Below are positions 21,925-61,719 of a stretch of DNA of 64,000 bases, piece by piece. Within the stretch, counting starts at the first letter, position 1; each line of letters starts with the position of its first letter. Position numbers and translations under genes: made by a program. The stretch covers positions 144,934 to 208,933 of the IMG/VR virus record IMGVR_UViG_3300027573_000779, one strand, 5' to 3'. The notes under the pieces are model-generated. The model saw nothing but the letters and a program-made list of their open reading frames with translations, did not search any database and was not told the origin of the DNA.

Positions 21925-22131
21925 TTAAGACCCATTATCAAGGTAACTTATCAAAACATCATTCTGTGCTTGGTCCTTTACTTGGTCCCAAATTGAGTCA
22001 TGAATTGGCCAAATTACGTTCCGAACTTGGTTCTCAACTTGGTCTGGAGTCTGGCCTTTAATTTGGCTTCTCATATGCCACATTTGGCTTCTGACGTGCT
22101 GTTGCCAAATTTGAACCTTTAAAGCATCCAT
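21925..22131 (-). CDS. QVWD-repeat mini-protein
   Basis: DQVENQVRN...IWDQVKDQ; DNA contains acttggtcccaaa. Confidence 0.75.
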   Translation of the reverse strand: MDALKVQIWQQHVRSQMWHMRSQIKGQTPDQVENQVRNVIWPIHDSIWDQVKDQAQNDVLISYLDNGS

Positions 22132-22287
22132 TCCCTTTAATTAATACTATCAATTAGCTTACCAAGAACAGAATTTTTATATCCACTCTCCGTTGCATCC
22201 ATTACGAGACAGACCAACGGAAAAATTGTAATTGTACACACAATCAGCAAAAAAAGGATAATTATTGCTCTGGCAAAAACTCTCATA

Positions 22288-22503
22288 TTAATCTTTTGTG
22301 TTTATGTTTTCTTCTAAACCCTTAACTATACATTCTGCCCATCGTGCGCCGAACCTCTTGTCATCAAGCTCCTTATCAATTTCCTTTAGAAAGGACTGAA
22401 TGTCTCTGCCTAAACCATCAGGGTAGCCGTCGCCATGCCTATAGACAATGGCTCCAGTTGAATCGTCGCTGTAACAGAAATGAATTGTAGCTCTAGTTGA
22501 CAT
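22288..22503 (-). CDS. MSTR...Y-x-H-x-DGYP family phage protein, possibly truncated
   Basis: MSTRATI...VYRHGDGYP. Confidence 0.5.
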   Translation of the reverse strand: MSTRATIHFCYSDDSTGAIVYRHGDGYPDGLGRDIQSFLKEIDKELDDKRFGARWAECIVKGLEENINTKD

Positions 22504-22509
22504 ATTTGG

Positions 22510-22537
22510 ATTATACGATATCTTTTTAAAACGTCAA
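22510..22537 (-). promoter_or_regulatory. Leaderless-type promoter TTGACG-N16-TATAAT-N6-ATG
   Basis: ATG at 22503; the -35 box overlaps a GGCGCTTGA junction core. Confidence 0.8.
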
Positions 22538-25620: not shown

Positions 25621-25783
25621 TTAATATGAATTGAATATCTGTTGTAATTTGGTCCGCAATTGGGTCCCCAATTTTAACCAACTGTTCGGTCCCAAATGTG
25701 ATTTTCAACTTGTTCTTGAACTTGGTCCCTAATTTCGTACCTAACTTGGTCTTCAAGTGTATCCCAAACTTTCTTCCCTATTT
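25621..25783 (-). pseudogene. Decayed QVWD-repeat gene bracketed by two junction elements
   Basis: No ATG; reads KVWDTLEDQVRYEIRDQVQEQVENHIWD, then a stop/frameshift, then IGDPIADQI. Confidence 0.6.
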
Positions 25784-26923: not shown

Positions 26924-27217
26924 CTAAGTGTTAAAGTTTTTATCGTCTTCGGCTTCTTTCTGAGACTGGTTCCGAATTTGACTCCCGATTTGTTCCCAAA
27001 TTTGTTCTCCAATCTGATTCTTGAAGTGTTTCCAAGTATATAGCCAAATATGATTCCCGGTTTGTTCCAATACTTGGTTATTAATGCTATCAGATACTTG
27101 CGATATCTGCTCCCAAACCGGCTCTTTTTTAAAGACAATAATATCCATAAACACATCTGCTGCCATTTCGGGTGCAATCATGATTGTCATAAACAACCCC
27201 GTCAATAACAGCAACAA
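26924..27217 (-). CDS. QVWD-repeat mini-protein
   Basis: VWEQI...NQIGEQIWEQIGSQIRNQ. Confidence 0.7.
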   Translation of the reverse strand: MLLLLTGLFMTIMIAPEMAADVFMDIIVFKKEPVWEQISQVSDSINNQVLEQTGNHIWLYTWKHFKNQIGEQIWEQIGSQIRNQSQKEAEDDKNFNT

Positions 27218-27819: not shown

Positions 27820-27870
27820 TTAAAAAAATTTAATATTCCGAACTTGGTCCCCAACTTGACCTTCGTTCAT
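27820..27870 (-). CDS. Minimal 16-aa QVWD-family remnant MNEGQVGDQVRNIKFF
   Basis: Two 12-bp units; its stop runs into the junction element at 27801-27821. Confidence 0.45.
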   Translation of the reverse strand: MNEGQVGDQVRNIKFF

Positions 27871-32502: not shown

Positions 32503-32963
32503 TCAAAATGAGTTTTTGGTAGTTACAAAAACTTGTTCCATAATTTGGAGTCGAACCTGTTCTTGGGTTTGTTCCCAACCTCTTTCTAATTGGTCCCAAA
32601 CTTGGTTTCCAACTTGGTTTCCAATTTGATTGCTAAAGTGATACCTAATTTGATTTAGAATTGTTAAATATTTTTTATCCATTTCACAAACAGGTCTAAG
32701 ACAAAAACCATACCGAATGCTAAAACTAATATTAATATAATGTACATTCATTCAACTAAACTGTTGATTTGGTGCTCAATTTGGTAGCCAATTTCTGCCC
32801 ACATTTGGTTTTGAGTTTGGTCCCAAACTTTGTTTTCTATGGTTTGATGCCCAATTTGCTTAGAAATTTGAAGTCTTATTAAGTCCAAAGTATCTGTTAA
32901 GACTTGGCACTGAAACCGGTACTGGTCCCTAATTTGGTCTTTTGTTTTAAATCTCTTCAACAC
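32503..32963 (-). CDS. Two tandem QVWD-repeat mini-proteins (32748..32963, 32503..32751)
   Basis: NQIGNQVGNQVWDQ; KVWDQTQNQMWAE. Confidence 0.7.
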
Positions 32964-33833: not shown

Positions 33834-34259
33834 TTAAAAATCAAGTCGATTGCTCAAGCCGCTCCTAAAAATTTCACTTACAATTTGGTCCCAAATTTGC
33901 CCCTTAACTTGGTTCCAAGTTTGTCCTCCAATTTGGCTCCCAACTTGTTTCCAAACTTGCTCCCAGACTTGGTCCCCAACTTGGCTCCAAACTTGGTCTA
34001 TAATCCTTTCTTTAATTATTTGGGTCATAAAGGCTTAAATTTGGTCCCAAATTGCGTCCTCAAGTTGTTTCCGAAGGTTGTCCCAAAGTTGTTCCCTAAG
34101 TGGATTCCAAACTTGTATAACCTGCATCCAAATTGGGTCCCAAACCTGTTCATCAAGCTGACTTTTAACTTGGTCCCCAACTTGGTCCCAAATAATCTTA
34201 CGAATCTCAATATCGGTTTGGTACCAATCCTCCGATAATTTGTCTAGCATCATTTTCAT
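33834..34259 (-). CDS. Two tandem QVWD-repeat mini-proteins (34035..34259, 33834..34028)
   Basis: DQVWSQVGDQVWEQVWKQVGSQ; IWDQVGDQVKSQLDEQVWD. Confidence 0.8.
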
Positions 34260-34581: not shown

Positions 34582-34797
34582 TCATAACCATATTTGCTCA
34601 AGAACTTGGTTCCGAACTTCCATGAAAACGTCATTCCTTATTTGTTCCCTAGATGGGTTTCCAACATGCTTCATAACTTGGCTCCCAATCTCAGTTCGGT
34701 CCCCAACTTGGTCCATAACGTGGTCCCAAACTTGGTCCATAACGCGGTCCCAAACTTGGTCCACAACTTGATACTGAATTTTGGTGACTAAGCTCAA
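34582..34797 (-). CDS. QVWD-repeat mini-protein
   Basis: QVVDQVWDRVMDQVWDHVMDQVGD. Confidence 0.8.
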   Translation of the reverse strand: MSLVTKIQYQVVDQVWDRVMDQVWDHVMDQVGDRTEIGSQVMKHVGNPSREQIRNDVFMEVRNQVLEQIWL

Positions 34798-35132: not shown

Positions 35133-36128
35133 TTAATAGTCCTGATTTAAAATCTTGACCGACAGTGATTTACCAAGAATTGGGGAATATTTGGGCGTTA
35201 TTGGTCGCAAAACAATCCCCTCTGCCTTGCGCTCTTGTCCTGTAGATGTGAGATAAATAGCCTTGTTAGCTTCTTCCTGAAGCCGCGCCATGGTCCAAGT
35301 ATCATCAAATGTAAAAGGTTCACTAACAGGAATAACCACAGGAATTTGCAATTGGTTGCATAACTCATTTATTTCCTGCCAGTTATACCATTTGCCAGTA
35401 TCAAATTCTTTAACATTAAAGACAAACATCTGAAAACTGTTCAGGCCCAATGGGTTACCTTGAATTTTGCCCCCGCAAGCCTCTGCTTGAATAGCAATGT
35501 TTTTACCCAACTCTTTAAGCTTAGAAGTTAGATTATATTGGTCTGCAATCTTCCAAAAGCCGGTCCCTTCTTTTTGCTCCAGCCGCCGACTGCAAACGCG
35601 AACTTCACCGTTTTCATAAATCACAGTCATTGAAGAACCGTCAGCTTTGATAGTTAAATAACAAAGTTCATTCCTAAACTCTTCTAAAATCTCTGGATAG
35701 TTTTGAATGTTTTCTTCGTCTGTAATTGAGATTAAATGAGTAGGAAAAGAACCCTTGGCGTCTCCATTAACAGAAGAATCAATAGGTTTGTCGTATTTTA
35801 AAATACCTAAAGCTTCCGAAACGTCCGAACCTTCTTCAACCTGATAGTTATAGCTTGGAATGATAGTTAAAGGGCAAACTAAACCCTGAGAAGGAGAGCC
35901 GCGAAACTTGGCGTTCCAGACACGATATTTTTGCCTTTCTAAAAAACTAAAATAAGAATTCGCGCTAGGAACAATAGAGTCAATACGAATAAACACCACT
36001 AAATCGCCGTTTTTATATTCTCCCTTCTTAACCACAACAGGCCATTCTTTAATTTTGGCGACTTCAAGAGAGTCGGCGTTGAAATGTGGTTGGACGCTAT
36101 GAATTCGTTCAATTGTGGCTAATTTCAT
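35133..36128 (-). CDS. ATP-dependent RNA ligase (Rnl2/DRB0094-like)
   Basis: N-terminal LATIERI...HFNADSLE; TDEENIQN; motif I KADGSS; CSRR; QAE..G..IQGN; EGIV; KILN. Confidence 0.92.
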   Translation of the reverse strand: MKLATIERIHSVQPHFNADSLEVAKIKEWPVVVKKGEYKNGDLVVFIRIDSIVPSANSYFSFLERQKYRVWNAKFRGSPSQGLVCPLTIIPSYNYQVEEGSDVSEALGILKYDKPIDSSVNGDAKGSFPTHLISITDEENIQNYPEILEEFRNELCYLTIKADGSSMTVIYENGEVRVCSRRLEQKEGTGFWKIADQYNLTSKLKELGKNIAIQAEACGGKIQGNPLGLNSFQMFVFNVKEFDTGKWYNWQEINELCNQLQIPVVIPVSEPFTFDDTWTMARLQEEANKAIYLTSTGQERKAEGIVLRPITPKYSPILGKSLSVKILNQDY

Positions 36129-36138
36129 TTTAAAAGGT

Positions 36139-36174
36139 ACCCACTAGCGAACTGGCTAGTGGGTGGTTTTTTTT
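36139..36174. terminator. Strong hairpin / terminator
   Basis: ACCCACTAGC-N6-GCTAGTGGGT followed by a T-run on +. Confidence 0.55.
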
Positions 36175-37018
36175 ACCTTTACTTAACAAGCCTGCAAACC
36201 AACAAACAGGTTAATTTGCAGCGTCTTCCCCGAAGACATTTTAATGATATCAAGCCTTTCTAAAAAGTCAATCTCTCAAGTGCCGAGGGGCTAAGTTTTC
36301 GCTAAGTGCGCCGCAAGGCTAATCTTTTTGGTGAACTTTAAATGCTAGTATCTTAGTGGGGTTTGGACAACGCCAACCGTCAGTAATACACTCATATCCA
36401 AGAGTCCTCAGAACTGTTCTAAAAGTATTTGTTTCACTTAATGATAGTTCTACCGCATCGCCCACATTCATTGTGTTCGCTAAAGTAATGAGATTCTTTA
36501 AGGTTTGTTCTCTTGAACCCCTTCCTTTAGGAATGGGTAAATTTTTATGTATCGTAAAACTTTTAACCATTCGTTTTATGGTAAAGGTAACATTTTACTT
36601 GGGATTAGCCTAAATCTATCTTTTTTGTTTTTGCTTTGAATATATCTTTTAATATCATCGTGTCTTCCATAAATACCCCTTTCAGAGTATTGATAAGGCT
36701 CCCATGCACCGTATCCATCCCAATCGGTACAAAACTCAATTACTATCTGAAAAACGGGCGCTTTTAAGTGAACCCATTTTCCTAGCTTAGAATCATAAAC
36801 ATGTACTCCAGCATTATCATAATATTTTTTGCGCTCTATTTCTTTATAGGTTGTGCCGCCTTTATTGCCACATTTCGGACAATATTCCCAAGGGTCTTCA
36901 ATATTTAAAGTAAACTGTTTATGGCAGCTTAAGCATTTAAAACGAGCATAATGGCCATCTCCATGGTCTTCTTGCCATTTGGGACTAATTTGTAATAAAG
37001 TTCTCATACAGGGCTATT

Positions 37019-37243
37019 TTATTTTTGGTCCCAAACTTGGTCCTCAACTTGGTCCCAAACTTGGCCCTGAACTTGGTCCCAAACTTGGTCCCGAACTTGG
37101 TCCCGAACTTGGTCCCGAACTTGGTCCCGAACTTGGTCCCGAACTTGGTCCCAAACTTGGTCCCAAACTTGGTCCCAAACTTGGTCCCGAACTTGGTCCC
37201 GAACTTGGTCCCAAACTTGGTCCTCAACTTGACCCTCAATCAT
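37019..37243 (-). CDS. Archetypal QVWD-repeat protein, 17 x (Q-V-[WRE]-D)
   Basis: MIEG(QVxD)17QK; same frame and strand as all diverged paralogs. Confidence 0.8.
37025..37233. repeat. 12-bp tandem array, 17 copies (+ strand AACTTGGTCCC[A/G])
   Basis: Direct reading. Confidence 0.97.
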
Positions 37244-37256
37244 AAAGATTTAGTTT

Positions 37257-37382
37257 TTAATTCCTCAACTTGCCAATAAACTTGGTCTTTAATTTGTTAC
37301 CATTAACTTGGTTCCAAACTTGGTCCCCAACTTGGTTCCGAACTTGGCCCCAAACTTGGCCCCAAACTTGGTCCGCGTTCAT
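37257..37382 (-). pseudogene. Frameshifted QVWD-repeat gene (not in track)
   Basis: MNADQVWGQVWGQVRNQVGDQVWNQV, then a frame change; QIKDQVYWQVEE continues in another frame. Confidence 0.6.
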
Positions 37383-37389
37383 AAAAGAA

Positions 37390-37411
37390 GGGTAGCCCCG
37401 CAAGGCTACCC
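37390..37411 (-). terminator. Hairpin/terminator after DUF932 gene
   Basis: GGGTAGCC-N6-GGCTACCC. Confidence 0.6.
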
Positions 37412-37420
37412 CAAATTAAC

Positions 37421-38425
37421 CTAATTTTTTGGCAAGGTTAAGTCCTGTAGGAGTAAATCAGTAGCCCTCTGTTTGAGATTAGCTCCAGTACCAAGTAGCG
37501 CCGATTCAAACTTTGCTTCCTGTCTATTAGCTCCTTCTTCTGCTCTGGTGCTTCTTTTTTGGTCAACAAATTCAGTTATACTGTTTAGGTAATCATACCT
37601 TGTCTCGCCTACATTCCCTGTGCCACGCTGAAAAAGTTCTGTTACCTGCTCTCGAATATTCTCAGTTCTTGAGCTACATTCATAAAGTCCAGTTTCCTTA
37701 TTCAATTTCCCCGGAAACAAGGTTTCATTGTACCTAACTACCTCTTCTTCATTGCATTTCTGGTCTTTGAGCATTTTCAAGACTAGCTCCAGCCGCCCAA
37801 AATAACCATAAGCAATTCCGAGCGCCCTTTGAACTTCCTCTTTGTGACTCTTAAAACTTTTGGTATGGCGCATCTTAACCTGATTCTTTGCGCCTTTTAG
37901 GGCTGCATTAAGGGTGTTTTGACAGACTACCCGCACCGCTACATTCTGCATCCATACTGAGTGCGTACCATCGTGGCTTGAAATCATCAAAATCCACTTG
38001 TCCATCTTATCGCTAGGGTCAATATACATGGTTTCTGGCAGCTTGGCCATAATCCAGATTTTGCGCCCCTCTCTTAAAGACCCCGCAGTCTCATAAACTG
38101 CCTGACCTTCAGAAATAACCGAATCAAAAAATTCAAAAGCTTCCTCGTTTTGGACTGGCGTATATCGATTACCTACCACTCCCAGTTTAACCCCATTGTC
38201 CTCCCTTACAACAGCTTTATAATCTTCAAATTCAGAAAGACCACTCTCTGTCTGAATAAAAATTGGCTCTTTGCGAACCCTCCAATCCAAATGCGCCAAT
38301 TGGATTGCTTCTTTGGCTGTAACTGTTCCTTTGACAACGCTTCCCAATGAATGCCAAGGAACTATATTATTACCGCTAAAAGTTTCCGCAGTGCCGTCTT
38401 CTCTAATTGTTATTTCGTGTGACAT
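37421..38425 (-). CDS. DUF932 family phage/plasmid protein
   Basis: PWHSLG, LDW.V, Y.PVQN.EAF.FF, ETAGSL..G..IW, SHDG, RVVCQNTL, RHT. Confidence 0.9.
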   Translation of the reverse strand: MSHEITIREDGTAETFSGNNIVPWHSLGSVVKGTVTAKEAIQLAHLDWRVRKEPIFIQTESGLSEFEDYKAVVREDNGVKLGVVGNRYTPVQNEEAFEFFDSVISEGQAVYETAGSLREGRKIWIMAKLPETMYIDPSDKMDKWILMISSHDGTHSVWMQNVAVRVVCQNTLNAALKGAKNQVKMRHTKSFKSHKEEVQRALGIAYGYFGRLELVLKMLKDQKCNEEEVVRYNETLFPGKLNKETGLYECSSRTENIREQVTELFQRGTGNVGETRYDYLNSITEFVDQKRSTRAEEGANRQEAKFESALLGTGANLKQRATDLLLQDLTLPKN

Positions 38426-38913: not shown

Positions 38914-39102
38914 CTAGTTTATTTTTAGGTCTCTAACTTGGTCCCAAATTTGTCCCACAACTTGGCTTCTAAATTGGTCCTGTATTTGGCTTTGGCCCCA
39001 AATTTGTTTCTTGGTTTCATGCCCAACTTGGTCCCAAATTTCGCTCCAAATTTGGTCCCAAACTTGGTCCCGAACTTGTCTTTTTATTAAATTACTATTC
39101 AT
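38914..39102 (-). CDS. QVWD-repeat mini-protein
   Basis: [20 protein letters not shown]. Confidence 0.8.
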   Translation of the reverse strand: MNSNLIKRQVRDQVWDQIWSEIWDQVGHETKKQIWGQSQIQDQFRSQVVGQIWDQVRDLKIN

Positions 39103-39395
39103 TCAAATAATCATCGGGATTAACTTCTTCGCCAACATCGTCTTCTTCAGTTAAAGGAGAACCACAAATAGCACAAATTTCTTCTAAAAGCGAATAGCTG
39201 CTATGCGCTCCGCCATCTCCCTCTTGAACCAATACTTCAACCAGTTTATAGACGCGCCAATTGACTAACTCTGCTAATACTGGCAAGTCTTCCTTGGTAG
39301 GAGGCCAACAAGAGGCGCAAAGGTCTAAATGTTGGTCGTTAAGTCTTATTCTAGGCATCTCTCAAGCGCCGAGGGGCTAAGTTTTCGCCGCAGGG

Positions 39396-40764
39396 CTAGT
39401 TTATTTTTATGTTCCAAATGTGTTCCACAACTTGGCCTTCTACTTCTTCCCCAACTTCTTCCCAAACTTGGCCCCAAACTTGTTCAAAAACCTGTTCCCA
39501 AACTTGACCTTCTACTTGGTCCCAAATTTGTTCCCCAATATGGTTATGAACTTGGCTCCTAATTTGGTCATCAATTTGCTTCCTAATGTTATCTTTCGTC
39601 ATTAACGCGCCGATTTAAATTCTGGTATTTCCATCCAATGCGCCCGAACTGAAGGTAAAGCTATTGTACTCGTATAAGTTAAATCATTGTCCGTCATAAC
39701 AATAATTTTTGTGCCTTGCTGCTCCCATCTTCCAGTAATTTGCTGCCATCCCTCTTTCCGTTTAAGAGACCAAAGAACGGTGGTTTTTTGTGGAGGTTTC
39801 TCTTTCTCGAAATTCTTCCAAATCATAAAAACGATGATAATAAAAGTTTTTAAAATGTCAATGCTCAAGCGCCGCAGGGCTTAAGCCCTTTTTTTAAAAC
39901 GCCGAGGGGCTAAGCGCCATAGGGGGTTCTGTGTTCCAAGCTTGGTGCCAAATTTGGTTTTCTACTTGGCTCCCAATCTGTTCCCAAACTTGGTCCCAAA
40001 TCTGTTCCCAAACTTGGCCCCAAACTTGGCCTTCTATTTGGTTCCAAATTTGGTCCCCAATATGGTGGTCCCCAATATGGTCCCTAACTTGGTCCATAAC
40101 TTGGTTCTGAATGTTGTCTCTTGTCATGTTCTTAAGGAGGGCTAGGTTTCACTAAAACATTTATTTGAAATTTGTATCATAACTTCATGCCGTAATTGGT
40201 TCCAGTGTTCCTGACCTTGGTAAACTTGGTCCCCAACTTGGTTCCAAACTGCTTGGTTCCCAACTAGGTTTTGAATACTCTTAAAAGTTTGCCCCAAAAC
40301 GCCATTATATAACTGATGATGTAACTGATTCTCAATCTTATTTCTAGTCATGTGTCTCTAAAACTTGGTCCCCAACTTGGGTCCTAACTTGGTTCCGAAT
40401 TTCTTCTAAAGATGGATGTAAAAAACGTCGCCCCCAAAGTAACGGGTGCGAAGTCGGGTCTTGGATTTGATTATAAATTTGCTTCAAAATTTGGTCCCAA
40501 GTTTGGCCCCAAACTTTTGCGAACACCTGACTCTTAATCTCATCTTTGGTCATGTTTTTAGTAAATTTTGCTGCACCGAAAAACTTGGTACAAAATTTCA
40601 TTTTTAATTTCATACCTTATTTGTGGGTCCCAATAATCCTGAATTTGGTTATGAACCTGCTTGCTAATTTGGTTGCCAGCTTGGTTGAACAACGGTCTTA
40701 CAACAAGTTCCGAAGTTTGACCCCGAACAAAAGCATCCTGATTCTCAATCTTATCTTGGGTCAT
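39396..40764 (-). CDS. Cluster of five QVWD-repeat paralogs (40558..40764, 40344..~40553, 40142..40351, 39894..40127, 39396..39602) interrupted by one unrelated ORF
   Basis: Shared N-termini MTQDKIENQ, MTKDEIKSQ, MTRNKIENQ, MTRDNIQNQ, MTKDNIRKQ. Confidence 0.8.
39861..39918 (-). repeat. Stacked junction elements fused to a promoter -35 box; block duplicated at 44097-44167
   Basis: taaaatgtcaatgctc..gccgcagggcttaa..cttttttt..aaacgccg.aggggcta at both sites. Confidence 0.8.
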
Positions 40765-44164: not shown

Positions 44165-44564
44165 CTAAAAAATGTCAAAAGTTTGGTCCCAAATACGGTC
44201 CAAAACTTGGTCTGCAACTTCATCTCTAAATTCACTAATGTCCCAAATTATAAGCGCAATCTGGCCCTTCACACTCCCCTCAACTTGGTCCGCTATTTGT
44301 CTTACGAGTGTGTCTTTAATTTTTTGGACCTTGTTATTTACTCTCATAAAAAATCTGGTTCCAATGGTTTAGAAGGTATTCCCAAATTGGGTCTGCAACA
44401 TCCTCAATCGTAAGTGCAATACTGTCTCTTTGGTCCCAAATCAGGTCTCTTACTGACTGCCCAACGTGGCTTACAATTTGGTCAACAAGGTGGTCGTCAG
44501 ATTCATGAATTCGATTTCTAATTTGATAAAGAGTTTCGCTCTCAATTTTGGTTAAATATATCAT
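44165..44564 (-). CDS. Two QVWD-family mini-proteins inserted between rIIA and rIIB
   Basis: QIADQVEG...ADQVLDRIWDQ; VDQIVSHVGQSVRDLIWDQ. Confidence 0.7.
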
Positions 44565-47466: not shown

Positions 47467-47778
47467 TCAGTCCGCCACTTTCCGAACCATTTCTTGGAAG
47501 TAATCGTACTCCCGAACCCTGCCCACTTCCCACAACCCCTTATCAAGAGTGATAGGGGCGTGCTCTTCATGGACAACGGTCGCTGACTTTTCCAGAGAGA
47601 GAAGAATTCTCTCGCCTTCCTGAATCAGTTCAAACTCGTCCTCTGCTTCGAGAATGTGACTGTGACCAGACTCGCCATGTGCTACCACATAATGTCTTAG
47701 TTTTGTGACCTTGGCTTCCTTGGAAGGAGGTTGGGTCACCCTTTTGAACAGAACGTCGCCTTGTTGTGCGGTTTTCAT
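47467..47778 (-). CDS. Conserved His-rich partner of DUF6745
   Basis: QQGDV...AHGESGHSH...HEEH..I.L..G......REY. Confidence 0.75.
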   Translation of the reverse strand: MKTAQQGDVLFKRVTQPPSKEAKVTKLRHYVVAHGESGHSHILEAEDEFELIQEGERILLSLEKSATVVHEEHAPITLDKGLWEVGRVREYDYFQEMVRKVAD

Positions 47779-47821
47779 ATATTGTTTCTCTATTATATTA
47801 CAGCTTTTTAAAAAGTCAAGC

Positions 47822-48841
47822 CTAGGTTAATTTCTCTGCATTCGTAAACCAATTACTGTTGCGCCATTTAAGGGCCGCTTCAATCGTGCTACATTCAGGG
47901 GCTACGCCCTCCAAATGCCACACTCCAACTGAAGGATTAAGCATCTTAAGATATTTGGCGTTTGGAACAACGTCTGATAAATTGACACTAAGAAGCTCAT
48001 AGTTGCCAAGCTTTTCCAAAACCTTATGACTTAAGCTTACCAACATGCGCTCAATTCCAATTTTGCGAATTAGCTCTCTCCGCTTGTCCACATTGGTTTC
48101 TTTTAAAACTTCTTTGGGATTGAGTTTTTCCGCAGGAGTTAAAACCTGTTTTGGGGACATAGCTATTCCATTCAGGAAATAAAGCTTCCAACCATCAGAA
48201 TATTCAACCGCTGGAGCTTCATCTTTGTGAAGTCGCCCTTCGCTATTGCGCCAAATTTGGGTTGGCTTGCTGGTAACAATGAGGCAGCTATCAGTAGGGT
48301 AAAAAAGGCCCAAATCCGCGCAAGCTTCAAGCTTATCGTAGTTTTTCATAACTTCAGCGTCAAATTTAACTCCAATCATCTTGTAGGCGCTTACCCACCC
48401 AAAATAATTGGAATAAAAATGACCATCAAAGTAGGGCCAGACAAAAAGCTTAATGGTATTTTTGAGCTTTGTAATAAGGTCCTCTTCTGAAAGAGGATTT
48501 TTGGACTTGAAAGTTATTTGGCTATTAATCTGTTCCCAAGTTGTTTCAAACAAGCCCCGCAAATTCTTATTTATCTCACTAAAACTGGGGCGCTTTGGAT
48601 TCCAGTTTTCATAGCCCCCCTCACTCAAAAGGCAAAAGGCAATCCAACCGCCAAAAGGACTAGAAACATGAATGACGGGGTTTTTCTTGCCCAAAATTTG
48701 CTCGCTCCATTCGCCTCCTAGCCTTTGTGCTTCGCTGGTTGGAACTTGGCGACAGTCAAGCGCCCTGTCCCGCCAGTAATTCTTGATTTCCTCAAGTTTT
48801 TTGACTTGTTCGTCAGTTAGTTTTTCGATTTTATCTGCCAT
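47822..48841 (-). CDS. DUF6745-like protein
   Basis: KIEKLT.EQ, P......GRLH....PAVEYSDGW..Y..NG, N...RR....IG.E, LKM.NPS.....E.V...C.T...AL.W. Confidence 0.8.
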   Translation of the reverse strand: MADKIEKLTDEQVKKLEEIKNYWRDRALDCRQVPTSEAQRLGGEWSEQILGKKNPVIHVSSPFGGWIAFCLLSEGGYENWNPKRPSFSEINKNLRGLFETTWEQINSQITFKSKNPLSEEDLITKLKNTIKLFVWPYFDGHFYSNYFGWVSAYKMIGVKFDAEVMKNYDKLEACADLGLFYPTDSCLIVTSKPTQIWRNSEGRLHKDEAPAVEYSDGWKLYFLNGIAMSPKQVLTPAEKLNPKEVLKETNVDKRRELIRKIGIERMLVSLSHKVLEKLGNYELLSVNLSDVVPNAKYLKMLNPSVGVWHLEGVAPECSTIEAALKWRNSNWFTNAEKLT

Positions 48842-48897
48842 ATTTTTTTAAGTTGTTCTCTAAATCTGTAGCTATGGTAACAAAACTTTTTGAAATG

Positions 48898-49499
48898 TCA
48901 ACAGTTTAGAAATTTTGAGCTTTCGTCCCAAATTTGTTCTGAAATTTGTTCCCAAGCGTCTTCAAGTCGAAAAAACTTCTCGTTCGCTATAATTTGGCTC
49001 CGAATTTGGAGATGAACTTGGTTATAAATTTCTCCTCCAATCAAACTCCGAAGTTCTATAATTTTAGTCGTCATCTGGTTCAAACGGTTCATATATTCAA
49101 GCGCCGAGAGACTATGTTGTTTTTGTGTTCATAACCGCAACTTGTTCCAAAATTGGGTTCCAAATTTGGTCCCTAAATTGGTCCCGCATTGGAGTCCAAA
49201 CTTGGTACCTAAATTGGTTCTTAATTTGGTCCCCAACTTGGTTATTAATTTTATCCCAAATTTGGTCCCCCATAATCTGAATTTTAGTATTAGCCATAAC
49301 TCTGGTTTCTTTACTAAGGGCTTAGTGTCTCCCTAAAAACTTGGTTCCAAAGCTGGTCCTCAATTTGGTGCTTGATTCGGTTTTCTATTGTGTCAATAAC
49401 TTTCCCAACTTGGTCCCAAACTTGGCTCCTAGCTTGATTCCAAAAAGCATGAGATATAATCATAGTTCTGGTTTCTTTACTAAAGTCATGCGCCGCCAT
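48898..49499 (-). CDS. Three tandem QVWD-family mini-proteins upstream of DUF6745
   Basis: GDQIWDKINNQVGDQ; WNQARSQVWDQVG; WEQISEQIWDE. Confidence 0.75.
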
Positions 49500-50504: not shown

Positions 50505-51143
50505 TTATTTTTGCTTCAAAATGAAGCTTAACCACTCTACCCTTGGGACAGTTGAAATTTCGCTTGCCGCAGTCCTAGGTAAAGGTTTTTTAGGCTCATA
50601 AAGAAGTCTGTGTCTGAAATTTTCGATAGGCATATTCCCTCTTTCACTGTTTAAGTCCCTATGGGCCAAAACAATATTGGTCCACTCGTCCTTTCCACCA
50701 TGGGATTTGGGTTTAACGTGTTCTAAAGAAGCTTCAGCTAAAGTTAAGATTTTACCACTATAAGCACATTTCTTGCCATAATGACGATAAGCGTTACGTT
50801 TGTTTAGTTTTAACTCCCTGAGGGCTAGACCGTTATAGTTTTTTGCCCTCATCACAATCGGCGCTCTAATAGTTCTTTTAGAGGTATGAATTGGAATGTC
50901 CCATGAACGAACCGGTAAATTCATCCAAGCTTCTAAATTAACTGGTTCCCAATAGCTAACTTTATCGAAATTCGGTCTGCCATCATCATCTAATTCAAAT
51001 TCAATATCAATCCCTTGAGAGGCCATATTGCCATCTTCTGAAGTAGAAAAAAGATTGGTAAGAGCCTTCTTTATTGTCGCGGTGCCTACAACAATATAAA
51101 GACTATTAAGAACAAGAACAAGCTGTTCATTTAAAAGGTTCAC
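50505..51143 (-). CDS. HNH endonuclease
   Basis: VLVLN, CAYSG, SLEHVKPKSHGG...WTNIV.....N..RGN. Confidence 0.88.
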   Translation of the reverse strand: MNLLNEQLVLVLNSLYIVVGTATIKKALTNLFSTSEDGNMASQGIDIEFELDDDGRPNFDKVSYWEPVNLEAWMNLPVRSWDIPIHTSKRTIRAPIVMRAKNYNGLALRELKLNKRNAYRHYGKKCAYSGKILTLAEASLEHVKPKSHGGKDEWTNIVLAHRDLNSERGNMPIENFRHRLLYEPKKPLPRTAASEISTVPRVEWLSFILKQK

Positions 51144-51805
51144 TAAAAAGAATTGTGTCGTTAACTGACCAAAGTAAAGGACTTATATCATTACCGAAAC
51201 CAACTTTTCTTACAATATCACCCCAATCAGAAACTAAAAATGACTGATAAATCTGCGTATCAATTTTTCTTCTTACTACTTTTATCTGGCTATACGGATG
51301 ATTCCAAACTCGGTCGCGAAATATGTTTCTATTCATCGTAAATTTATTCAAAAAATTCATTCAAATAAATTGCATCGTTAAGCCTCCAACTTAAAAGAGT
51401 TAAATTGTGCCCAAGATAGGTTCTTATTTCAATGTCGTGCCAAACAGAAGTTGATAATGACTTTAAAATTTGTGTATGAATTTCTTCTCTGATTCTTTGT
51501 ATCTGTATATTCGGATGAACCAAAGTTTGGTTTAAAACCGTGTCTATGTTGTTCATTGTCTATTCAAAAACTTTACTAAATACAATTCCCTCCTCAATAG
51601 CCCAAACTAGACGATGATAAGAAAAAGGAATGGTCTTTTTGATTTCTAAACATAAATTTGAGTGAATCTCTGAGTTTTGTTGCACAAGAATTTTGTTTGT
51701 TGCCAGTTTTTCTATCTGGCTATTCGGATGAGTCCAAACTTGGTTCCAAATTATGTTTGTTTCCATTATCGTAATCAACTTTATCTTTGATAACCTTGGT
51801 GCCAA
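51127..51805 (-). CDS. Tandem triplet of HPxxQI mini-proteins (diverged QVW-family branch)
   Basis: RVWNHPYSQI / QTLVHPNIQI / QVWTHPNSQI with matching C-termini. Confidence 0.7.
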
Positions 51806-56419: not shown

Positions 56420-56632
56420 TCATAAAATACTAGTCTCAATTTGGGCTTCAACTTGGGTCCGAATTTGGCTCAAAAGCCGGTTTCCAGAATACTGAGTTCC
56501 CCAAACTTCTCCTCGAACTTGTCCCTGAACTTGGTTGAAAACTTGACTCACAATCTCATTCTTAACCTTGCCAAGAATTCGCTCAAAAGTGCTGTCCCAA
56601 ATTTGGTTTGGAGATTTTAGGTCATCGGACAT
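56420..56632 (-). CDS. QVWD-family mini-protein
   Basis: NQIWD...SQVFNQVQGQVRGEVWG...SQIRTQVEAQI. Confidence 0.75.
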   Translation of the reverse strand: MSDDLKSPNQIWDSTFERILGKVKNEIVSQVFNQVQGQVRGEVWGTQYSGNRLLSQIRTQVEAQIETSIL

Positions 56633-57312: not shown

Positions 57313-58695
57313 TTACACTCCACTAGGTTCTAAAGATACCATTCCAGTGAAATAACTCAATGGTTGAGTATGGGTAGGCCAAAACCCAGTATAATAGTTA
57401 AAGTGTTGGACGTAACCTGTAGCAGTAAAGTATTGAGTTCTATAGGTCACTCCCGTAGCGCCGCCAAAACCAGTAATTACCACCACGTTCATCTTATAAT
57501 TACGATTTGGAACTACCCCTATACAATGAATGTGTATAGTGCCCGTTACATATTGTATTCCGCTAGTAGTGTTTTTTGGCCTACCATATCTAAAAGGAAT
57601 AACATTGTCATCTTCAGTTAGTTGAGTGGGGGCAGTAAAACCGGGATTATTCCACATTAAATTATTACCAATCAAATCAAAATCAATAGCATCAAAAGGA
57701 GATATCCAAGTTATTGCTGAATTAACACCACTGGTTTCTGAAGTTATTTCATTAAAAAAGGCGTTTTCAGCTAAAGGATTACCTATAGTAACAGCAAATT
57801 GTCTATTGTAATAATCATAGGTTAACAAAGGATACAAACTCCTTATCATTTGAAGACATTTACCTGTTTTTTGGGTAGCCGAACCATCAAGACGAATATT
57901 TAACGCTGTTTCAAAATAATAATCGCCGCTTCCGGGCAAGTCTTGGACAAGTACAAAGGTGCTTGGGCTACCATGACTGCTTGTGTCATAAAATGAAACA
58001 CCTATAGTATCGCCAGTATTAGGCACCCAGTTATCATTAAATTGAACCCATTTAGGACCGTTCACTGTCACTTCTCCAACTTGACCCGATTGAGGGCCAT
58101 TTAAAGCATAAACAAGCCAATCGGTCTGGTTAGACCATCCTGACAATTGACGCCCCCAAACAAAGTTTCCTGAAAGGTGTAGTTTGGTTTGAGCGCCAGT
58201 TTCTATCCCTGTAACTATCCCGCTTTGCCAAAGAGTAAAAATATCACCACCAAAGCCGCCGAAACCCCATCCTGTGCAAAAGAAAGCTTGGCCGCTGTTC
58301 CTGTTAAACTTGGTTATTACGCTCTTGGTTTTTCTAGTAGCGCTATCCCCATTCCATTGAGAGCCAAACATAGAAGGGGGAGCGCCCGAATCAAAAGGAT
58401 AAACAAAATCCCCAGTTAAAGCCTCTTCCCAACCAAAACTAGTTAAATCATGAAAATAATCATAAAAAGCCCCAGTGCCGGTAACAGTATAACCGCTAAA
58501 AACTGGGTAAATCCTTGATATTACGCTACTTACAAGTTGCCTATTTAATGTAATTCCGGTTCCTCCCGTAATTGCACTATAATACCCCGAGGCATAACCT
58601 GAAGCAAAAGGAAAGAAGGTATTATAAGGCTGGCCTGTATAATACCCATGAAGAGTGGCCTCAAAGTGTTGCTGCGTCCCGCTTGCGTATGACAT
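57313..58695 (-). CDS. Gly/Thr/aromatic-rich beta protein, probable virion/structural
   Basis: Many SG/TG motifs; GTGTAA element upstream (58706-58711); the next gene 57095..57304 also has GTGTAA-N8. Confidence 0.5.
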   Translation of the reverse strand: MSYASGTQQHFEATLHGYYTGQPYNTFFPFASGYASGYYSAITGGTGITLNRQLVSSVISRIYPVFSGYTVTGTGAFYDYFHDLTSFGWEEALTGDFVYPFDSGAPPSMFGSQWNGDSATRKTKSVITKFNRNSGQAFFCTGWGFGGFGGDIFTLWQSGIVTGIETGAQTKLHLSGNFVWGRQLSGWSNQTDWLVYALNGPQSGQVGEVTVNGPKWVQFNDNWVPNTGDTIGVSFYDTSSHGSPSTFVLVQDLPGSGDYYFETALNIRLDGSATQKTGKCLQMIRSLYPLLTYDYYNRQFAVTIGNPLAENAFFNEITSETSGVNSAITWISPFDAIDFDLIGNNLMWNNPGFTAPTQLTEDDNVIPFRYGRPKNTTSGIQYVTGTIHIHCIGVVPNRNYKMNVVVITGFGGATGVTYRTQYFTATGYVQHFNYYTGFWPTHTQPLSYFTGMVSLEPSGV

Positions 58696-59822
58696 TCATC
58701 ATACATTACACTTTTTTAACTAGTTCTTGGGGGATGTCGAAGGTTTTTACGAAATCTATTATTTCGTGTGAAATTTCAAGAGTATGGCAAATTGGGATAT
58801 AATATTCAGTTTTGTGGGATATCACAGCATCCACCCAAAAAGAAGCAGGAACCATTTTACAATCACTCTGTTCCCTATACTCATCACTTAGTTTTTGAAA
58901 ACGATAGTGCGCGACTTCTATAAACCACTTTTTAACCCTTTTAACTTTGCCTTCAGAATTAGCAAAAGCTAAAGTAGTTTCTTTTTGGCATTTATGTTCC
59001 TCAATAACACCTTGAAGGTAGGATATCTTTTTTTCAATAGTGTCAAAAAAGTCCTCTTTTAAGTGACCTTGTAAGTAAATTTTTCTATTGGTTTTTTTGT
59101 CTGCGTCTTCTACTGTGTCGTAACTAAAACCCCCAAAACTCCAACTGAATAATTCTAAAAAAACCGGAGGCTCGGTCATTACATCCCAAAGCGGACTGTC
59201 GTAAAACCCCTTAGCAAACGCCGCTGCTTTATAGATATTAATTTCCACTGTATTTAGTCTGACAATGACAGTTGTTTTTCTGCGCCAACCAAACTTAAAG
59301 CCATTAAACCATTGTCTTTGTTATTATCCACTAGACTCCGAATTTGCCCCGCAATATCGCCAATCCTTCTTTGTTGTTCGGCAGGTAAGGACGCTATTAT
59401 ACCCTTAATCATGAAAACAGTTTCTTCCTCTTCAGATATAAATTTATTCATTTTTGTTTATCTTCCTCTTGCTGTTTTGTTCACAAACTCCATTAAACAA
59501 ACTCTCGGAGCCACTTTGACCTTAACTGCTTTTGCAATATTAACTATAGAAAAAATAAAAAATATCGTCCCAAGAAATAACATTATAGCCCCCGTTACCA
59601 TCATATCACTCTCATTATAAGATTTTTGCGCCTTCCATTTGAAAAACATCCGCGCCAAAATAAAAGCAACAATAGCAAATAATCCTAGAACTGCCGCTAA
59701 AGAGCTATACTTAATAAGTTCCCAATTTAAAAACTCCTGAACCACCAAGGGGGCTTGTTCTTTGACAAAAACGGTCCCTTCTTGAAGGGTGCTGATAATT
59801 ATTTGATTTAAATTAGTGTCAT

Positions 59823-60197
59823 TCATATACTTTTTGCGACAACCCAAACAGTTTTAATCTCATTTGGTTTGGTTCTAGGAAAAATCTTTTGAACCACTTT
59901 CTGTGCGACAGTAGTTAGACAATGACTAATGTCATGAACAAACCTTGTTTCATTAGTGCTATAAAACCAACATTTATAACCACGACCACAATAACCACGA
60001 CCAGTTACTTGTTTCAATAAGTGTATTTTTTTACCTTTTTTAATTGGTGTTGTTAAAACGGTTACTTTTATTCTTTCAGGTAAATTCTCTTCGGGTTTAG
60101 AAAGTAAAAACCCTACAAACTCGTTACAAAGAGCCTCGCTCCCATGTGAATCCACATAAAAAGCCCCGCTCCAATCCAACTCAAATGTTCTTTGCAT
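59823..60197 (-). CDS. Hypothetical, CxxFV-P paralog family member 4 (start moved to MQRTF)
   Basis: ALCNEFVGFLL...PERIKVTV; promoter lies inside the track's N-terminal extension. Confidence 0.6.
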   Translation of the reverse strand: MQRTFELDWSGAFYVDSHGSEALCNEFVGFLLSKPEENLPERIKVTVLTTPIKKGKKIHLLKQVTGRGYCGRGYKCWFYSTNETRFVHDISHCLTTVAQKVVQKIFPRTKPNEIKTVWVVAKSI

Positions 60198-61719
60198 TTT
60201 TAAAAGGATAACAAAGTTTTTTGAAATGTCAACTCTCAAACGCCGAGGGGTTAATTTTTTGCCGCCTTTATAAAAGAATTAAAAATGCATACCAAAACAC
60301 TATCATGAACTTGGATTTTTGTAGGATTATCTAAAGTTGTGAAATCATCGCAGTATCCATAATAAATTTTACTCCAATCAATTTTCCCCCAAACCTTTTC
60401 GTATATTTTATATTTGATAAAATATTGTTGGTATGTTTGAATTTTATAAAAATCCATTTTACTCAATTATTGTCGCCGTTACTGTTCTTACTATTCTACT
60501 CGGAAGTCTAACAATTCCGGTTGTTTGATTAGTAATGGCATTTTTAAAGCTTGTCCTGTGAATAGGTCCTAGCCCAATAGTATGTTCAGAGCCTTCTATA
60601 CTATTTGACACCGTAATGCTAACAAGAGTCATTTTTTCTACTACAAATGATGCATTGGTTGTTAGAACGTTTGTTATAATAGAGCCAAAAAAAATATTTG
60701 GGTCATAATGCCTGATATTAAAAGAAATCCCATTAGTTGGACCTGAATAATTCCAAGTCATTTCGGTAGGAACATCTTGAGCAGTCGCAGTAAAAACCAT
60801 CAACAATCCAAAAAACTTCTTCATTTAAAAGAAGGATATCAAGCTCTTCTTTAGTCGTCAACAAAATTAGCAATAGTTTTAAAACCTTCATAGTTTATTC
60901 AAAATAAGGCAAAAGCATGAAAATTGTTTGGTACTTTCCAAAAACCTTACCGTGAAAGTAATAACAATCTCCACCTATAGCCGCAAACAGTGCATCTATG
61001 TAATTTGGTTCCTTATCTTCATCAAAAACCAACCAAGTGTCATATTTACACCCCTCCTGAATCCGCCCACCCTGCTCTAAAAGGATTGGTAGGAGAGCTT
61101 CTTTCTTCTTTTTTCCTTCAGGAGTAAGCACCCATTCGCCGGAAACTATTATGCCATATGTCATTTGTTTTTATAAAATTCATCTATTTCAACCCATTCA
61201 GGCACATTGCCTTTCCACCACCATTCGCCAACCCTCTGATGTCTTTCCATTGGCTCAGTAACTAATACTTTCTTAATTGCTGATAAATAATAAGCCGCTT
61301 CGTCATCTAAATAGGTGTCGCCTTCCATCTCTGGATGTGTTGCAGCACAAAAAATCCTCCCATTTTTTCTAATTCTAACAGCCATAACATTTATATTTAA
61401 TTATTTTTTTATGACCATAAATATCTTTGCTACCAATAAATACTTTTGGAAGTTTTATAATCCTGCTATCAGACTGAAACTGGTCAAGCGTGGGGTCAAT
61501 TATAGTTCCATCTTCCATTTCTAGCCAACAATGATGCGCTCTCATCAATTCTCCCTCCACAAGCGAGGTTTTAACGCCTATTGCTGATAAATAGCCCTGA
61601 AGTGGAAAACACATCATAAAACAGAAATTATCCGAAGACCTTCCGTTAAGCATACCCTTTCTGAAAGATGTGACCAACGAACGTAATTTAAATTTGCTTA
61701 TCACAAGCTTTCTTCTCAT

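What the first reader, a model, noticed from the sequence alone, without database searches (positions are those of the whole stretch)
21925..60466. Massively expanded family of stand-alone tetrapeptide-repeat (Q-V/I-W/R/G-D/N) mini-genes at every stage of birth and decay
Seen: about 30 ORFs of 60-90 aa share a strict 4-residue period. Q and V/I are fixed, while positions 3-4 are hypervariable. Members: 21925, 26924, 32503, 32748, 33834, 34035, 34582, 37019, 38914, 39396, 39894, 40142, 40344, 40558, 44165, 44334, 48898, 49112, 49314, 56420; more diverged at 42981, 51127-51805, 53082, 54956, 60251 and possibly the 2.6-4.7 kb + strand cluster. The DNA unit CAAGTTTGGGAC remains recognisable across copies. 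One copy is a near-pure 17-mer array (37019), others are frameshifted (37257) or start-less (25621), and one is collapsed to 2 units (27820). Inference: a repeat-driven, rapidly diversifying library of single amphipathic helices (4-residue period, aromatic stripe, possibly right-handed coiled coil or filament). It may act as variable decoys or inhibitors of a host defence or receptor, with the pure array as a young or donor copy. I know no named system with this architecture.
Basis: partly seen in the sequence, partly recalled or inferred. Interest (0 to 1): 0.92.

Follow-up and report, generated by a model that had tools for sequence, protein, structure and literature searches.

The report
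Phage tetrapeptide-repeat mini-proteins tied to DUF6745
About two dozen tiny genes in this 209-kb groundwater phage encode helical proteins built from a four-residue Q-V-x-x repeat; they are free-standing copies of a length-variable repeat that related phages carry inside one protein (DUF6745), and so belong to a widespread, unnamed three-part phage module of unknown function.

Summary
The window has 21 secure minus-strand mini-genes of 57-82 aa with a strict Q-[V/I]-x-x period, plus 3 decayed copies. All lie at 21.9-56.6 kb and nowhere else in the 209-kb genome. About 8 "diverged" candidates are unproven.

The family is not peculiar to this phage. The same repeat occurs in more than 100 viral contigs (GC 25-71%) and in 1,950 protein clusters. 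It takes two mutually exclusive forms:
- an internal insertion of 24-240 aa in DUF6745 proteins;
- arrays of 2 to about 77 stand-alone mini-genes beside a DUF6745 gene that lacks the perfect repeat.

The split form arose at least 3 times. A third gene, a ~105-aa protein with an invariant E-x-G-H-x-H motif, flanks DUF6745 in 55 of 63 loci. The window carries all three parts (47467-49499).

Q and V are kept through different codons. Residues 3-4 vary far more than the synonymous sites do. Alleles with identical flanks differ in repeat number.

No family library or paper names the mini-genes. The closest known analogue is mycobacteriophage Tweety gp54, a non-homologous A-A-x-x repeat protein that acts as a tunable counter-defence.

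Function here is inferred, not shown. My best guess is a tunable host-interaction module.

The parts
21925..22131 (-). QVxx mini-gene, 68 aa
   Evidence: HMM E 6e-16; ATG start; fills the gap between neighbouring minus-strand genes
26924..27148 (-). QVxx mini-gene; start uncertain (ATG at 27148 overlaps the upstream gene by 20 nt)
   Evidence: HMM E 2e-18
32503..32751 (-). QVxx mini-gene, 82 aa or shorter; 4-nt overlap with the next one
   Evidence: HMM E 8e-17
32748..32963 (-). QVxx mini-gene, 71 aa, GTG start
   Evidence: HMM E 4e-18
33834..34028 (-). QVxx mini-gene, 64 aa, 10 units
   Evidence: HMM E 4e-22
34035..34259 (-). QVxx mini-gene, 74 aa
   Evidence: HMM E 5e-18
34582..34797 (-). 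QVxx mini-gene, 71 aa, TTG start
   Evidence: HMM E 5e-14; 24-nt TRF array with 91% matches
37019..37243 (-). near-pure array gene, 74 aa, 17 units of QV[W/R]D
   Evidence: TRF 17.2 copies, 91% matches; HMM E 1e-21; Logan contigs break inside it
37257..37403 (-). frameshifted copy (frame change after QVNG; repeat continues in another frame)
   Evidence: three-frame translation
38914..39102 (-). QVxx mini-gene, 62 aa
   Evidence: HMM E 2e-13
39396..39602 (-). QVxx mini-gene, 68 aa, N-terminus MTKDNI
   Evidence: HMM E 3e-22
39894..40127 (-). QVxx mini-gene, 77 aa, N-terminus MTRDNI; the modelled member
   Evidence: HMM E 9e-24; AF2 helices 3-18 and 23-65, pLDDT 73
40142..40351 (-). QVxx mini-gene, 69 aa, degenerate repeat
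   Evidence: HMM E 1e-17
40344..40553 (-). QVxx mini-gene, 69 aa from MTKDEI; two helical parts with a proline-rich break
   Evidence: HMM E 3e-16
40558..40764 (-). QVxx mini-gene, 68 aa, degenerate
   Evidence: HMM E 4e-15
44165..44347 (-). diverged member, 60 aa
   Evidence: HMM E 1e-11
44334..44564 (-). diverged member, 76 aa
   Evidence: HMM E 1e-12
48898..49092 (-). mini-gene directly upstream of the DUF6745 gene
   Evidence: HMM E 8e-11
49112..49297 (-). mini-gene, 61 aa
   Evidence: HMM E 2e-14
49314..49499 (-). mini-gene, 61 aa
   Evidence: HMM E 2e-15
56420..56632 (-). mini-gene, 70 aa, outlying copy
   Evidence: HMM E 7e-15
25674..25781 (-). start-less remnant, 35 in-frame codons of repeat
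27820..27870 (-). 16-aa ORF with two units (collapsed copy)
47822..48841 (-). DUF6745 protein, 339 aa. It has no perfect repeat; by my reading of its sequence, residues ~73-133 are a degenerate repeat at the place where relatives carry 24-240 aa of QVxx.
   Evidence: Pfam PF20530 52.9 bits against a cut-off of 27; 159 homologues; AF2 pLDDT 83 with a low-confidence stretch at 76-91; sister to the fused L124 protein
47467..47778 (-). conserved partner, 103 aa: QGD...E-x-G-H-x-H...H...C-terminal D
   Evidence: adjacent to DUF6745 in 55 of 63 loci; invariant residues; no Pfam or PDB match; fused to DUF6745 in one Atlas cluster

Best explanation
The mini-genes encode free-standing copies of an alpha-helical Q-V-x-x tetrapeptide-repeat module. 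In most related phages this module is an internal, length-hypervariable insertion between the N-terminal and C-terminal parts of one DUF6745 protein. The module has three parts: a small H-x-H protein, DUF6745, and the repeat, supplied either in cis (fused) or in trans (mini-genes).

Shown:
- The homology of the members.
- The cis/trans exclusivity and its repeated origin.
- The one DUF6745 : one partner : many mini-genes ratio.
- Conservation of Q and V through different codons.
- Excess change at residues 3-4.
- Repeat-number differences between otherwise identical alleles.

Inferred:
- Arrays grow and shrink by slippage of the 12-nt unit.
- The Q/V stripe is the constant contact or packing face of the helix.
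- Residues 3-4 (an NGG codon giving W/R/G, and a D/N/G/S codon) form a variable face under selection for diversity.
- The module is a non-essential host-interaction device, most likely a tunable counter-defence or takeover function. Helix length and surface would set specificity, as in Tweety gp54.
- In this phage about 21 variants would serve one DUF6745/partner pair.
For: - Family and confinement.
- Spread: more than 120 viral loci at GC 25-71%; 1,950 representative proteins at E <= 1e-3, the top ones being 350-600-aa proteins with long internal repeats, of which the two I read in full (P0001, P0005) end in a DUF6745-like C-terminal part; at least 100 unnamed Atlas clusters of mostly viral proteins, the three listed being 61-79 aa and 100% viral.
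- Exclusivity: 36 of 36 repeat-bearing DUF6745 genes have no mini-genes in the locus. 23 of 23 loci with mini-genes and a DUF6745 gene have no perfect repeat inside DUF6745, and nearly all mini-genes lie on the same strand, usually within 0-400 bp of it. Genome-wide, fused G009 has no free mini-genes.
- Repeated fission or fusion: at least 3 changes are forced by well-supported branches. The window's DUF6745 is sister (100/97) to a fused protein with about 27 units.
- Stoichiometry: one DUF6745 and one partner in each complete genome checked, G000, G001 and G007 (for G000 the DUF6745 hit is and the partner is the window ORF 47467-47778), with about 21, 9 and 77 mini-gene matches.
- Partner: adjacent in 55 of 63 loci, also in prophages and in Microcystis phage Ma-LMM01 gp175/gp174; fused to DUF6745 in one Atlas cluster.
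- Coding constraint: the dominant Val codon differs between lineages (GTC, GTT, GTG, GTA), and likewise GAT/GAC and CAA/CAG. Neighbouring genes overlap by 4 nt, and the mini-genes have conserved N- and C-terminal tails.
- Diversification: within loci the fraction of units differing from the majority base is 0.50, 0.24, 0.27 and 0.31 at positions 7, 8, 10 and 11, against 0.15 and 0.08 at synonymous positions 9 and 12.
- Length tuning: alleles P0162-P0165 have 100% identical flanks but repeat spans of 24, 63, 75 and 123 aa.
- Helix prediction.
- Genomic setting among replication, recombination and accessory genes, not virion genes.
- Analogue with a shown counter-defence role tuned by repeat number: PMC2884959 and PMC9262239.
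Against: - There is no direct evidence of translation or function. No RNA run was listed, and no defence-related family matches (PADLOC).
- In trans the mini-genes cannot act as a spacer between two domains, which is the proposed mode of action of gp54. The analogy therefore covers the fused form better than the form in this window.
- Most mini-genes here are scattered over 35 kb rather than placed next to DUF6745.
- Some mini-gene loci show no DUF6745 gene, though those records are incomplete.
- The DUF6745 fold matches nothing solved, so no chemistry can be proposed.
- Repeat-length differences between metagenomic alleles could partly be assembly artefacts.
- This phage's mini-genes are identical in the runs that cover them.
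Confidence: 0.6

Rival explanations
1. One reading: the mini-proteins are autonomous variable decoys or inhibitors that each bind a host defence or receptor protein on their own, without DUF6745 or the partner.
For: Most copies in this window lie far from DUF6745. Residues 3-4 vary in a way that suggests selection for diversity. Tweety gp54 shows that a tetrapeptide-repeat protein can be a counter-defence.
Against: The strict cis/trans exclusivity with DUF6745, the repeated fission or fusion, and the 1:1:N ratio all argue for a shared function.
Confidence: 0.15
2. The repeats are substrates. The mini-proteins, and the internal repeats, would be ribosomal precursor peptides modified or cut by the metal-binding-looking partner and/or DUF6745. 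This would resemble one-enzyme/many-precursor RiPP systems, which also exist in fused and split forms.
For: One DUF6745 and one partner serve many small variable peptides. The partner has an invariant E-x-G-H-x-H...H...D pattern reminiscent of metal sites. Fused and split architectures both occur.
Against: No known RiPP enzyme family matches. There is no leader/core organisation or protease site. In fused proteins the repeat lies between two folded parts rather than at an end. No transporter or immunity gene was seen in the neighbourhoods examined.
Confidence: 0.1
3. The repeats are virion decoration or fibre subunits: helical rods that assemble on the particle.
For: They are long predicted helices with an aromatic stripe, and weak sub-threshold PHROG hits to tail proteins appear.
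Against: The module sits among replication, recombination, methylase and accessory genes in prophages, in Ma-LMM01 and here. The PHROG hits are at E > 0.03. Copy number ranges from 0 to 77 between relatives.
Confidence: 0.06
4. The feature is purely at the DNA level: a hairpin-prone 12-nt minisatellite that spreads by slippage or recombination, with the ORFs incidental.
For: All six frames are open in the arrays. Synonymous sites are nearly uniform within a locus, and 71 of 96 loci share CAR-GTC-NGG-NNT whatever their GC content. The preferred units are among the most self-complementary synonymous versions.
Against: Q, V and D are kept through different codons in different lineages. The repeat is in frame inside hundreds of DUF6745 proteins. 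The mini-genes have start codons, conserved tails, 4-nt overlaps and a single orientation. Neutral DNA would not concentrate change at codon positions 1 and 2.
Confidence: 0.04

Closest known systems
Mycobacteriophage Tweety gp54 (with Che8 gp57 and PMC gp51) tetrapeptide-repeat protein: Pham et al. 2007 (PMC2884959); counter-defence role summarised in Hatfull 2022 (PMC9262239)
   Same: Both have a 12-bp unit encoding a tetrapeptide, with the first two residues invariant and residues 3-4 variable. Residue 3 toggles between W and G through the first base of an NGG codon. Third codon positions are less variable than first and second positions. Repeat number differs between close relatives. Both are non-structural accessory genes. 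In fused DUF6745 proteins, as in gp54, the repeat separates an N-terminal from a C-terminal part.
   Different: There is no homology (hhalign probability 0.1%; tblastn finds no Tweety match). The unit is A-A-x-x rather than Q-V-x-x. gp54 has different flanking domains, no DUF6745, no H-x-H partner, and no free-standing mini-gene form. The gp54 function is shown experimentally; nothing is shown here.
Pfam DUF6745 (PF20530) proteins
   Same: The window's ORF 47822-48841 is a member. The QVxx repeat is an insertion in many members, and the mini-genes are the same repeat.
   Different: The Pfam model covers only the C-terminal domain. The repeat, the mini-genes and the partner are not part of any model, and no function is recorded (0 papers).
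Bordetella phage BPP-1 bbp36 variable region 2, as cited in PMC2884959
   Same: A tandem in-frame repeat in a non-essential phage gene whose copy number differs between isolates.
   Different: It has a 24-bp unit in an unrelated protein. I did not examine it here.
One-enzyme/many-precursor RiPP systems (prochlorosins; fused and split borosins); this comparison rests on my own knowledge
   Same: Many small hypervariable peptides per single partner enzyme, with fused and split forms.
   Different: No RiPP enzyme family, leader peptide or export gene was found. This is a resemblance of layout only.

Membership tests
Unnamed DUF6745-linked QVxx repeat module (defined here) | At least 3 consecutive Q-[V/I]-x-x units in an ORF of about 45-110 aa | tested here: met
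Unnamed DUF6745-linked QVxx repeat module (defined here) | A single DUF6745 gene in the same genome, lacking the perfect internal repeat when mini-genes are present | tested here: met
   One PF20530 hit in G000; 0 perfect repeat residues in P0156; general rule 23 of 23
Unnamed DUF6745-linked QVxx repeat module (defined here) | An H-x-H partner gene next to DUF6745 | tested here: met
   47467-47778 lies directly downstream
Pfam DUF6745 (for ORF 47822-48841) | Score above the gathering threshold | tested here: met
   52.9 bits against 27
Tweety gp54-type tetrapeptide-repeat proteins | 12-bp unit with two invariant residues then two variable ones, and synonymous sites less variable than codon positions 1-2 | tested here: met
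   compared with PMC2884959
Tweety gp54-type tetrapeptide-repeat proteins | Homology to gp54 (flanking domains or the A-A-x-x repeat) | tested here: not met
   hhalign probability 0.1%; no Pfam family in common; no tblastn hit in Tweety; profile A1 finds nothing in Tweety
Tweety gp54-type tetrapeptide-repeat proteins | Repeat number varies between near-identical alleles | tested here: inconclusive
   Met for fused DUF6745 relatives, though assembly artefacts are possible. Not testable for the window's array because contigs break in it.
Tweety gp54-type tetrapeptide-repeat proteins | Neutralises a host or prophage defence system | not testable with these tools
   Needs experiments
Diversity-generating retroelement targets | A reverse transcriptase and template repeat in the genome; changes at adenines | tested here: not met
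   No RVT_1 in G000 or G001. The variable positions 7, 8 and 10 are mostly T or G in the unit.
Pfam DUF4816 / NCBIfam GvpQ (weak hits) | Score above the curated cut-off | tested here: not met
   At most 19 bits against 29.4; at most 36 bits against 100
RiPP precursor peptides | A neighbouring enzyme of a known RiPP class, with leader/core organisation | tested here: not met
   No Pfam family for the partner or neighbours. Post-translational modification itself is not testable here.

The most novel reading that the evidence does not exclude
QVxx mini-proteins, internal DUF6745 repeats and the unrelated Tweety gp54 repeat would be instances of one general phage strategy: slippage-prone tetrapeptide helices whose length and W/R/G 'barcode' face are tuned by selection. 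In the split form, large phages would carry libraries of 20-77 interchangeable specificity subunits for a single DUF6745/H-x-H machine that disables diverse host defences or otherwise acts on host proteins.
Probability: 0.25. Interest if true: 0.85.

Novelty: new variant of a known kind. Interest (0 to 1): 0.7.

Why it matters
Phage tetrapeptide-repeat proteins have so far been known from a handful of mycobacteriophages. One of them is a mutationally tunable counter-defence.

This work shows a second, unrelated and much larger family. It is spread across phages of hosts from 25 to 71% GC. It has a clear genetic partnership (DUF6745 plus an H-x-H protein) and a natural cis/trans experiment repeated at least three times.

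That gives three uncharacterised families a common, testable context. It explains a class of tiny repetitive ORFs that gene callers and annotators usually ignore. It also offers a tractable system for studying how repeat slippage plus selection generates specificity in phage-host conflicts.

Tried and rejected
- Word-indexed homologue search with one mini-protein: no candidates.
I replaced it with a degenerate DNA pattern scan.
- blastn of 33.0-40.9 kb against cultured phages: no match.
- Pfam, PHROGs, NCBIfam and PADLOC on mini-proteins: only sub-threshold noise.
- Fold searches of the DUF6745 model against PDB: nothing. Foldseek best E 1.3; VIA wide best Z 4.4.
- Profile searches of DUF6745 and the partner against PDB sequences: 0 hits.
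- DNA-mimic idea: rejected. The median net charge of 181 mini-proteins is -1 and only 55% are acidic.
- DGR mutagenesis: rejected, no reverse transcriptase.
- Antisense or dual coding: rejected as a general explanation. The common GAT codon puts TGA stops in the antisense Q-T-W-S frame; this is my own reasoning from the units. That frame is open only in the window's GAC version.
- Covariation between Q and V third bases: not supported, since CAA is commonly paired with GTC.
- Read-level copy-number test at 37025-37233: not possible. Only Logan contigs exist, and they break inside the array.
- RNA evidence: no run listed.
- Orthologue dN/dS: only 2 usable pairs (pN/pS 4.7), too few to rely on.
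- Membership of 51127-51805 and the other 'diverged' ORFs: not demonstrable.

Full report
**What is there.** The window is the last 64 kb of a 208,933-bp IMG/VR virus record (CheckV 100% complete) from a groundwater metagenome. Between 21.9 and 56.6 kb, almost all genes are on the minus strand. Small ORFs of 57-82 aa with a strict four-residue period Q-[V/I]-x-x fill the gaps between larger genes.

An iterative HMM over every ORF of at least 30 aa in the genome converges on 21 minus-strand members (E 1e-11 to 9e-24). It also picks up antisense ORFs of the same arrays, which are artefacts of a quasi-palindromic unit. A frame-independent regex finds the period only at window 22018-56545 in the whole genome. 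The DNA core occurs 27 times against 0.64 expected.

The "more diverged" candidates reach only marginal scores. The 51127-51805 trio is a paralogue family of its own.

**It is not private to this phage.** Translating them shows two architectures:
- Tandem arrays of stand-alone 45-110-aa genes. They have lineage-specific N-terminal leaders and C-terminal tails and often overlap by 4 nt. I counted up to about 13 per fetched locus.
- Proteins of 350-550 aa in which a long QVxx repeat sits between an N-terminal domain and a C-terminal Pfam DUF6745 domain.

A profile of the window's members finds 1,950 representative proteins at E <= 1e-3 among 1.84 billion. The best hits are 350-600-aa proteins with long internal repeats; the two I read in full end in a DUF6745-like C-terminal part. 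All that carry a name are "hypothetical". The ESM Atlas holds at least 100 unnamed clusters resembling the mini-protein, mostly viral; the three listed are 61-79 aa and 100% viral.

**The link to DUF6745.** The window's own ORF 47822-48841 is a DUF6745 protein (52.9 bits against a cut-off of 27). Three mini-genes lie immediately upstream of it.

Across the fetched loci the two architectures exclude each other. All 36 DUF6745 genes with an internal repeat (36-240 repeat residues) have no mini-genes nearby. All 23 loci with both mini-genes and a DUF6745 gene have no perfect repeat inside DUF6745. In a complete 56-kb genome of the fused type, the only profile matches lie inside the DUF6745 ORF.

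A maximum-likelihood tree of the DUF6745 domain needs at least 3 changes of state on well-supported branches. The window's protein is sister (100/97) to a fused protein with about 27 units. Reading the window's protein myself, residues ~73-133 still show a decayed period-4 pattern. In the AF2 model this is the low-confidence stretch between two well-packed parts (pLDDT 83 overall). In fused relatives, then, the repeat must leave and re-enter a compact body; that last step is my inference.

**A third component.** A protein of 100-125 aa flanks DUF6745 in 55 of 63 loci. Here it is 47467-47778. It carries an invariant G (in a near-universal N-terminal QGD), E-x-G-H-x-H, a later H, and a C-terminal D as its last residue. 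The same pair occurs in prophages of bacterial chromosomes, in other large phages and in the cultured Microcystis phage Ma-LMM01 as gp175/gp174. It has no Pfam or PDB relative. One Atlas cluster has it fused to DUF6745.

Each complete genome checked has one DUF6745 and one partner, with very different mini-gene counts:

| Genome | Size | Mini-gene matches |
|---|---|---|
| G001 | 190 kb | about 9 |
| G000 (this phage) | 209 kb | about 21 |
| G007 | 369 kb | about 77, in one ~20-kb block with DUF6745 inside it and the partner at its end |

Ma-LMM01 has the gene pair but no QVxx repeat at all. The repeat is therefore an optional third part of the module.

**Is it protein or only DNA?** All six frames are open in the arrays, so an open frame proves nothing by itself. 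The evidence for a protein-level constraint is as follows:
- Q, V and D are retained while the dominant codons differ between lineages: GTC, GTT, GTG or GTA; GAT or GAC; CAA shifting to CAG with rising GC.
- The repeat lies in frame inside hundreds of two-domain proteins.
- The mini-genes have start codons, conserved tails, a single orientation and short overlaps with their neighbours.

Within loci, change is concentrated at the first and second positions of codons 3 and 4 (0.50, 0.24, 0.27, 0.31). The synonymous third positions change much less (0.15, 0.08). This is the reverse of neutral decay. It is the same pattern that Pham et al. reported for Tweety gp54. Residue 3 is essentially an NGG codon, giving TGG = W, CGG or AGG = R, and GGG = G. 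No reverse transcriptase is present, so a DGR is excluded.

Four alleles of one fused DUF6745 protein have 100% identical flanks but repeat spans of 24, 63, 75 and 123 aa. Another pair has 28 against 36 aa. Short-read assemblies can misjudge repeat length, so this needs long reads.

In this phage itself, contigs from two public runs (groundwater, which may be the source sample, and one freshwater sediment) are letter-identical over long stretches of the mini-gene region; a third, low-coverage sediment run gives only short identical pieces. All break inside the pure array, so its copy number could not be tested. No RNA run was listed.

**Structure and function.** AF2 predicts the modelled mini-protein as helices 3-18 and 23-65 with no tertiary fold (pLDDT 73, pTM 0.36). 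By my reading of the translations, many window members show two helical stretches separated by a short P/G-containing break, which would fit a hairpin.

The mini-proteins are not markedly acidic, with a median net charge of -1. That argues against DNA mimicry.

The DUF6745 fold matches nothing solved. AlphaFold DB and the Atlas show only DUF6745 proteins, including cyanobacterial fusions to leucine-rich repeats.

The module sits among replication, recombination, methylase and accessory genes. In this window the neighbours are an RNA ligase, RlaP, DUF932, an HNH endonuclease, a GHKL-type ATPase and a RuvB-like AAA protein. It is not among virion genes.

**Comparison with what is known.** Searches for DUF6745 and for the repeat strings found no paper on them. 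The closest described case is mycobacteriophage Tweety gp54:
- It has 48 A-A-[G/W/Q]-[S/Y] units of 12 bp, with third codon positions invariant.
- Its repeat number differs from that of Che8 (26 units) and PMC (15 units) (PMC2884959).
- Defence-escape mutants that overcome the Phrann gp29/gp30 system map to gene 54 and change the repeat number. This suggests the spacing of its N- and C-terminal parts tunes a counter-defence (PMC9262239).
- gp54 is not homologous to DUF6745 or to the mini-proteins.

So this is an analogue, not a relative. The fused DUF6745 proteins "work like" gp54 in layout. The free mini-genes have no described counterpart.

**Verdict.** It misses that these are the in-trans form of a DUF6745 insertion and part of a three-gene module common in uncultured phages. 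Function is unknown. A tunable host-interaction or counter-defence role is my best inference. A substrate (RiPP-like) role is the main mechanistic alternative.

Noticed in passing
window 47467-47778 (-); L125:3111-3482 (Ma-LMM01 gp175): A widespread unnamed ~105-aa phage protein with an invariant G (in QGD), E-x-G-H-x-H, a later H, and a C-terminal D as its last residue. It almost always sits next to DUF6745 and is sometimes fused to it. It looks like a small metal-binding beta protein.
   Followed up: partly
78 related loci (those with at least 20 repeat units); window arrays: Synonymous-site anomaly. 71 of 96 loci use CAR-GTC-NGG-NNT whatever their GC content, very unlike the codon use of the flanking genes. 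The preferred units are among the most self-complementary synonymous versions. The window uses the rarer CAA-GTT-NGG-GAC.
   Followed up: partly
most related loci (not the window): Because Asp is GAT and is followed by CAR, the arrays carry a GATC site every 12 nt. The same T is also kept after Asn, Ala and Gly codons, so GATC is probably not the cause.
   Followed up: no
window 33850-34038, 37025-37279, 39931-40110 (+) and others: Antisense ORFs of the arrays read S-Q-T-W, L-V-P-N or G-P-K-L repeats and even match the family HMM. These are by-products of the quasi-palindromic unit, open here only because this phage uses GAC.
   Followed up: yes
G007:C1:337000-358100 (369-kb phage behind L090): About 77 profile matches in one ~20-kb block, with the single DUF6745 gene inside the block and the partner gene at its end. 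This expansion is far larger than the window's.
   Followed up: partly
window 51127-51805 (-): Three tandem paralogues of 70-81 aa (39% identity, E 7e-14) with a shared C-terminal motif. This is a separate small family, not demonstrably QVxx.
   Followed up: partly
window 2610-4739 (+): A cluster of small plus-strand ORFs with faint period-4 helical patterns (E 1e-3 to 0.02 to the family HMM). Similar faint small genes surround the repeat-less DUF6745 of the jumbo phage locus L123.
   Followed up: no
window 63846-63922 (-): A tRNA-Met (CAT) gene near the end of the record.
   Followed up: no
L012:4081-5461 and similar loci: In tandem arrays, the +1 frame of one mini-gene (R-S-G-I repeats) runs open into the next gene's start. 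ORF finders therefore report long chimeric N-terminal extensions.
   Followed up: no
AlphaFold DB / Atlas hits: Cyanobacterial cellular proteins fuse a full DUF6745 fold to leucine-rich repeats. Mycobacterial DUF6745 relatives are labelled '17 kDa surface antigen family protein'; I suspect this label is spurious, but I did not check it.
   Followed up: no
window 35133-46666 (-): The mini-genes are interspersed with RNA ligase (35133-36128), DUF932 (37421-38425), RlaP nucleotidyltransferase (40751-41488), a RuvB-like AAA protein (41770-42738), a GHKL-type ATPase (44561-46666) and an HNH endonuclease (50505-51143). This is an accessory arm of the genome.
   Followed up: partly
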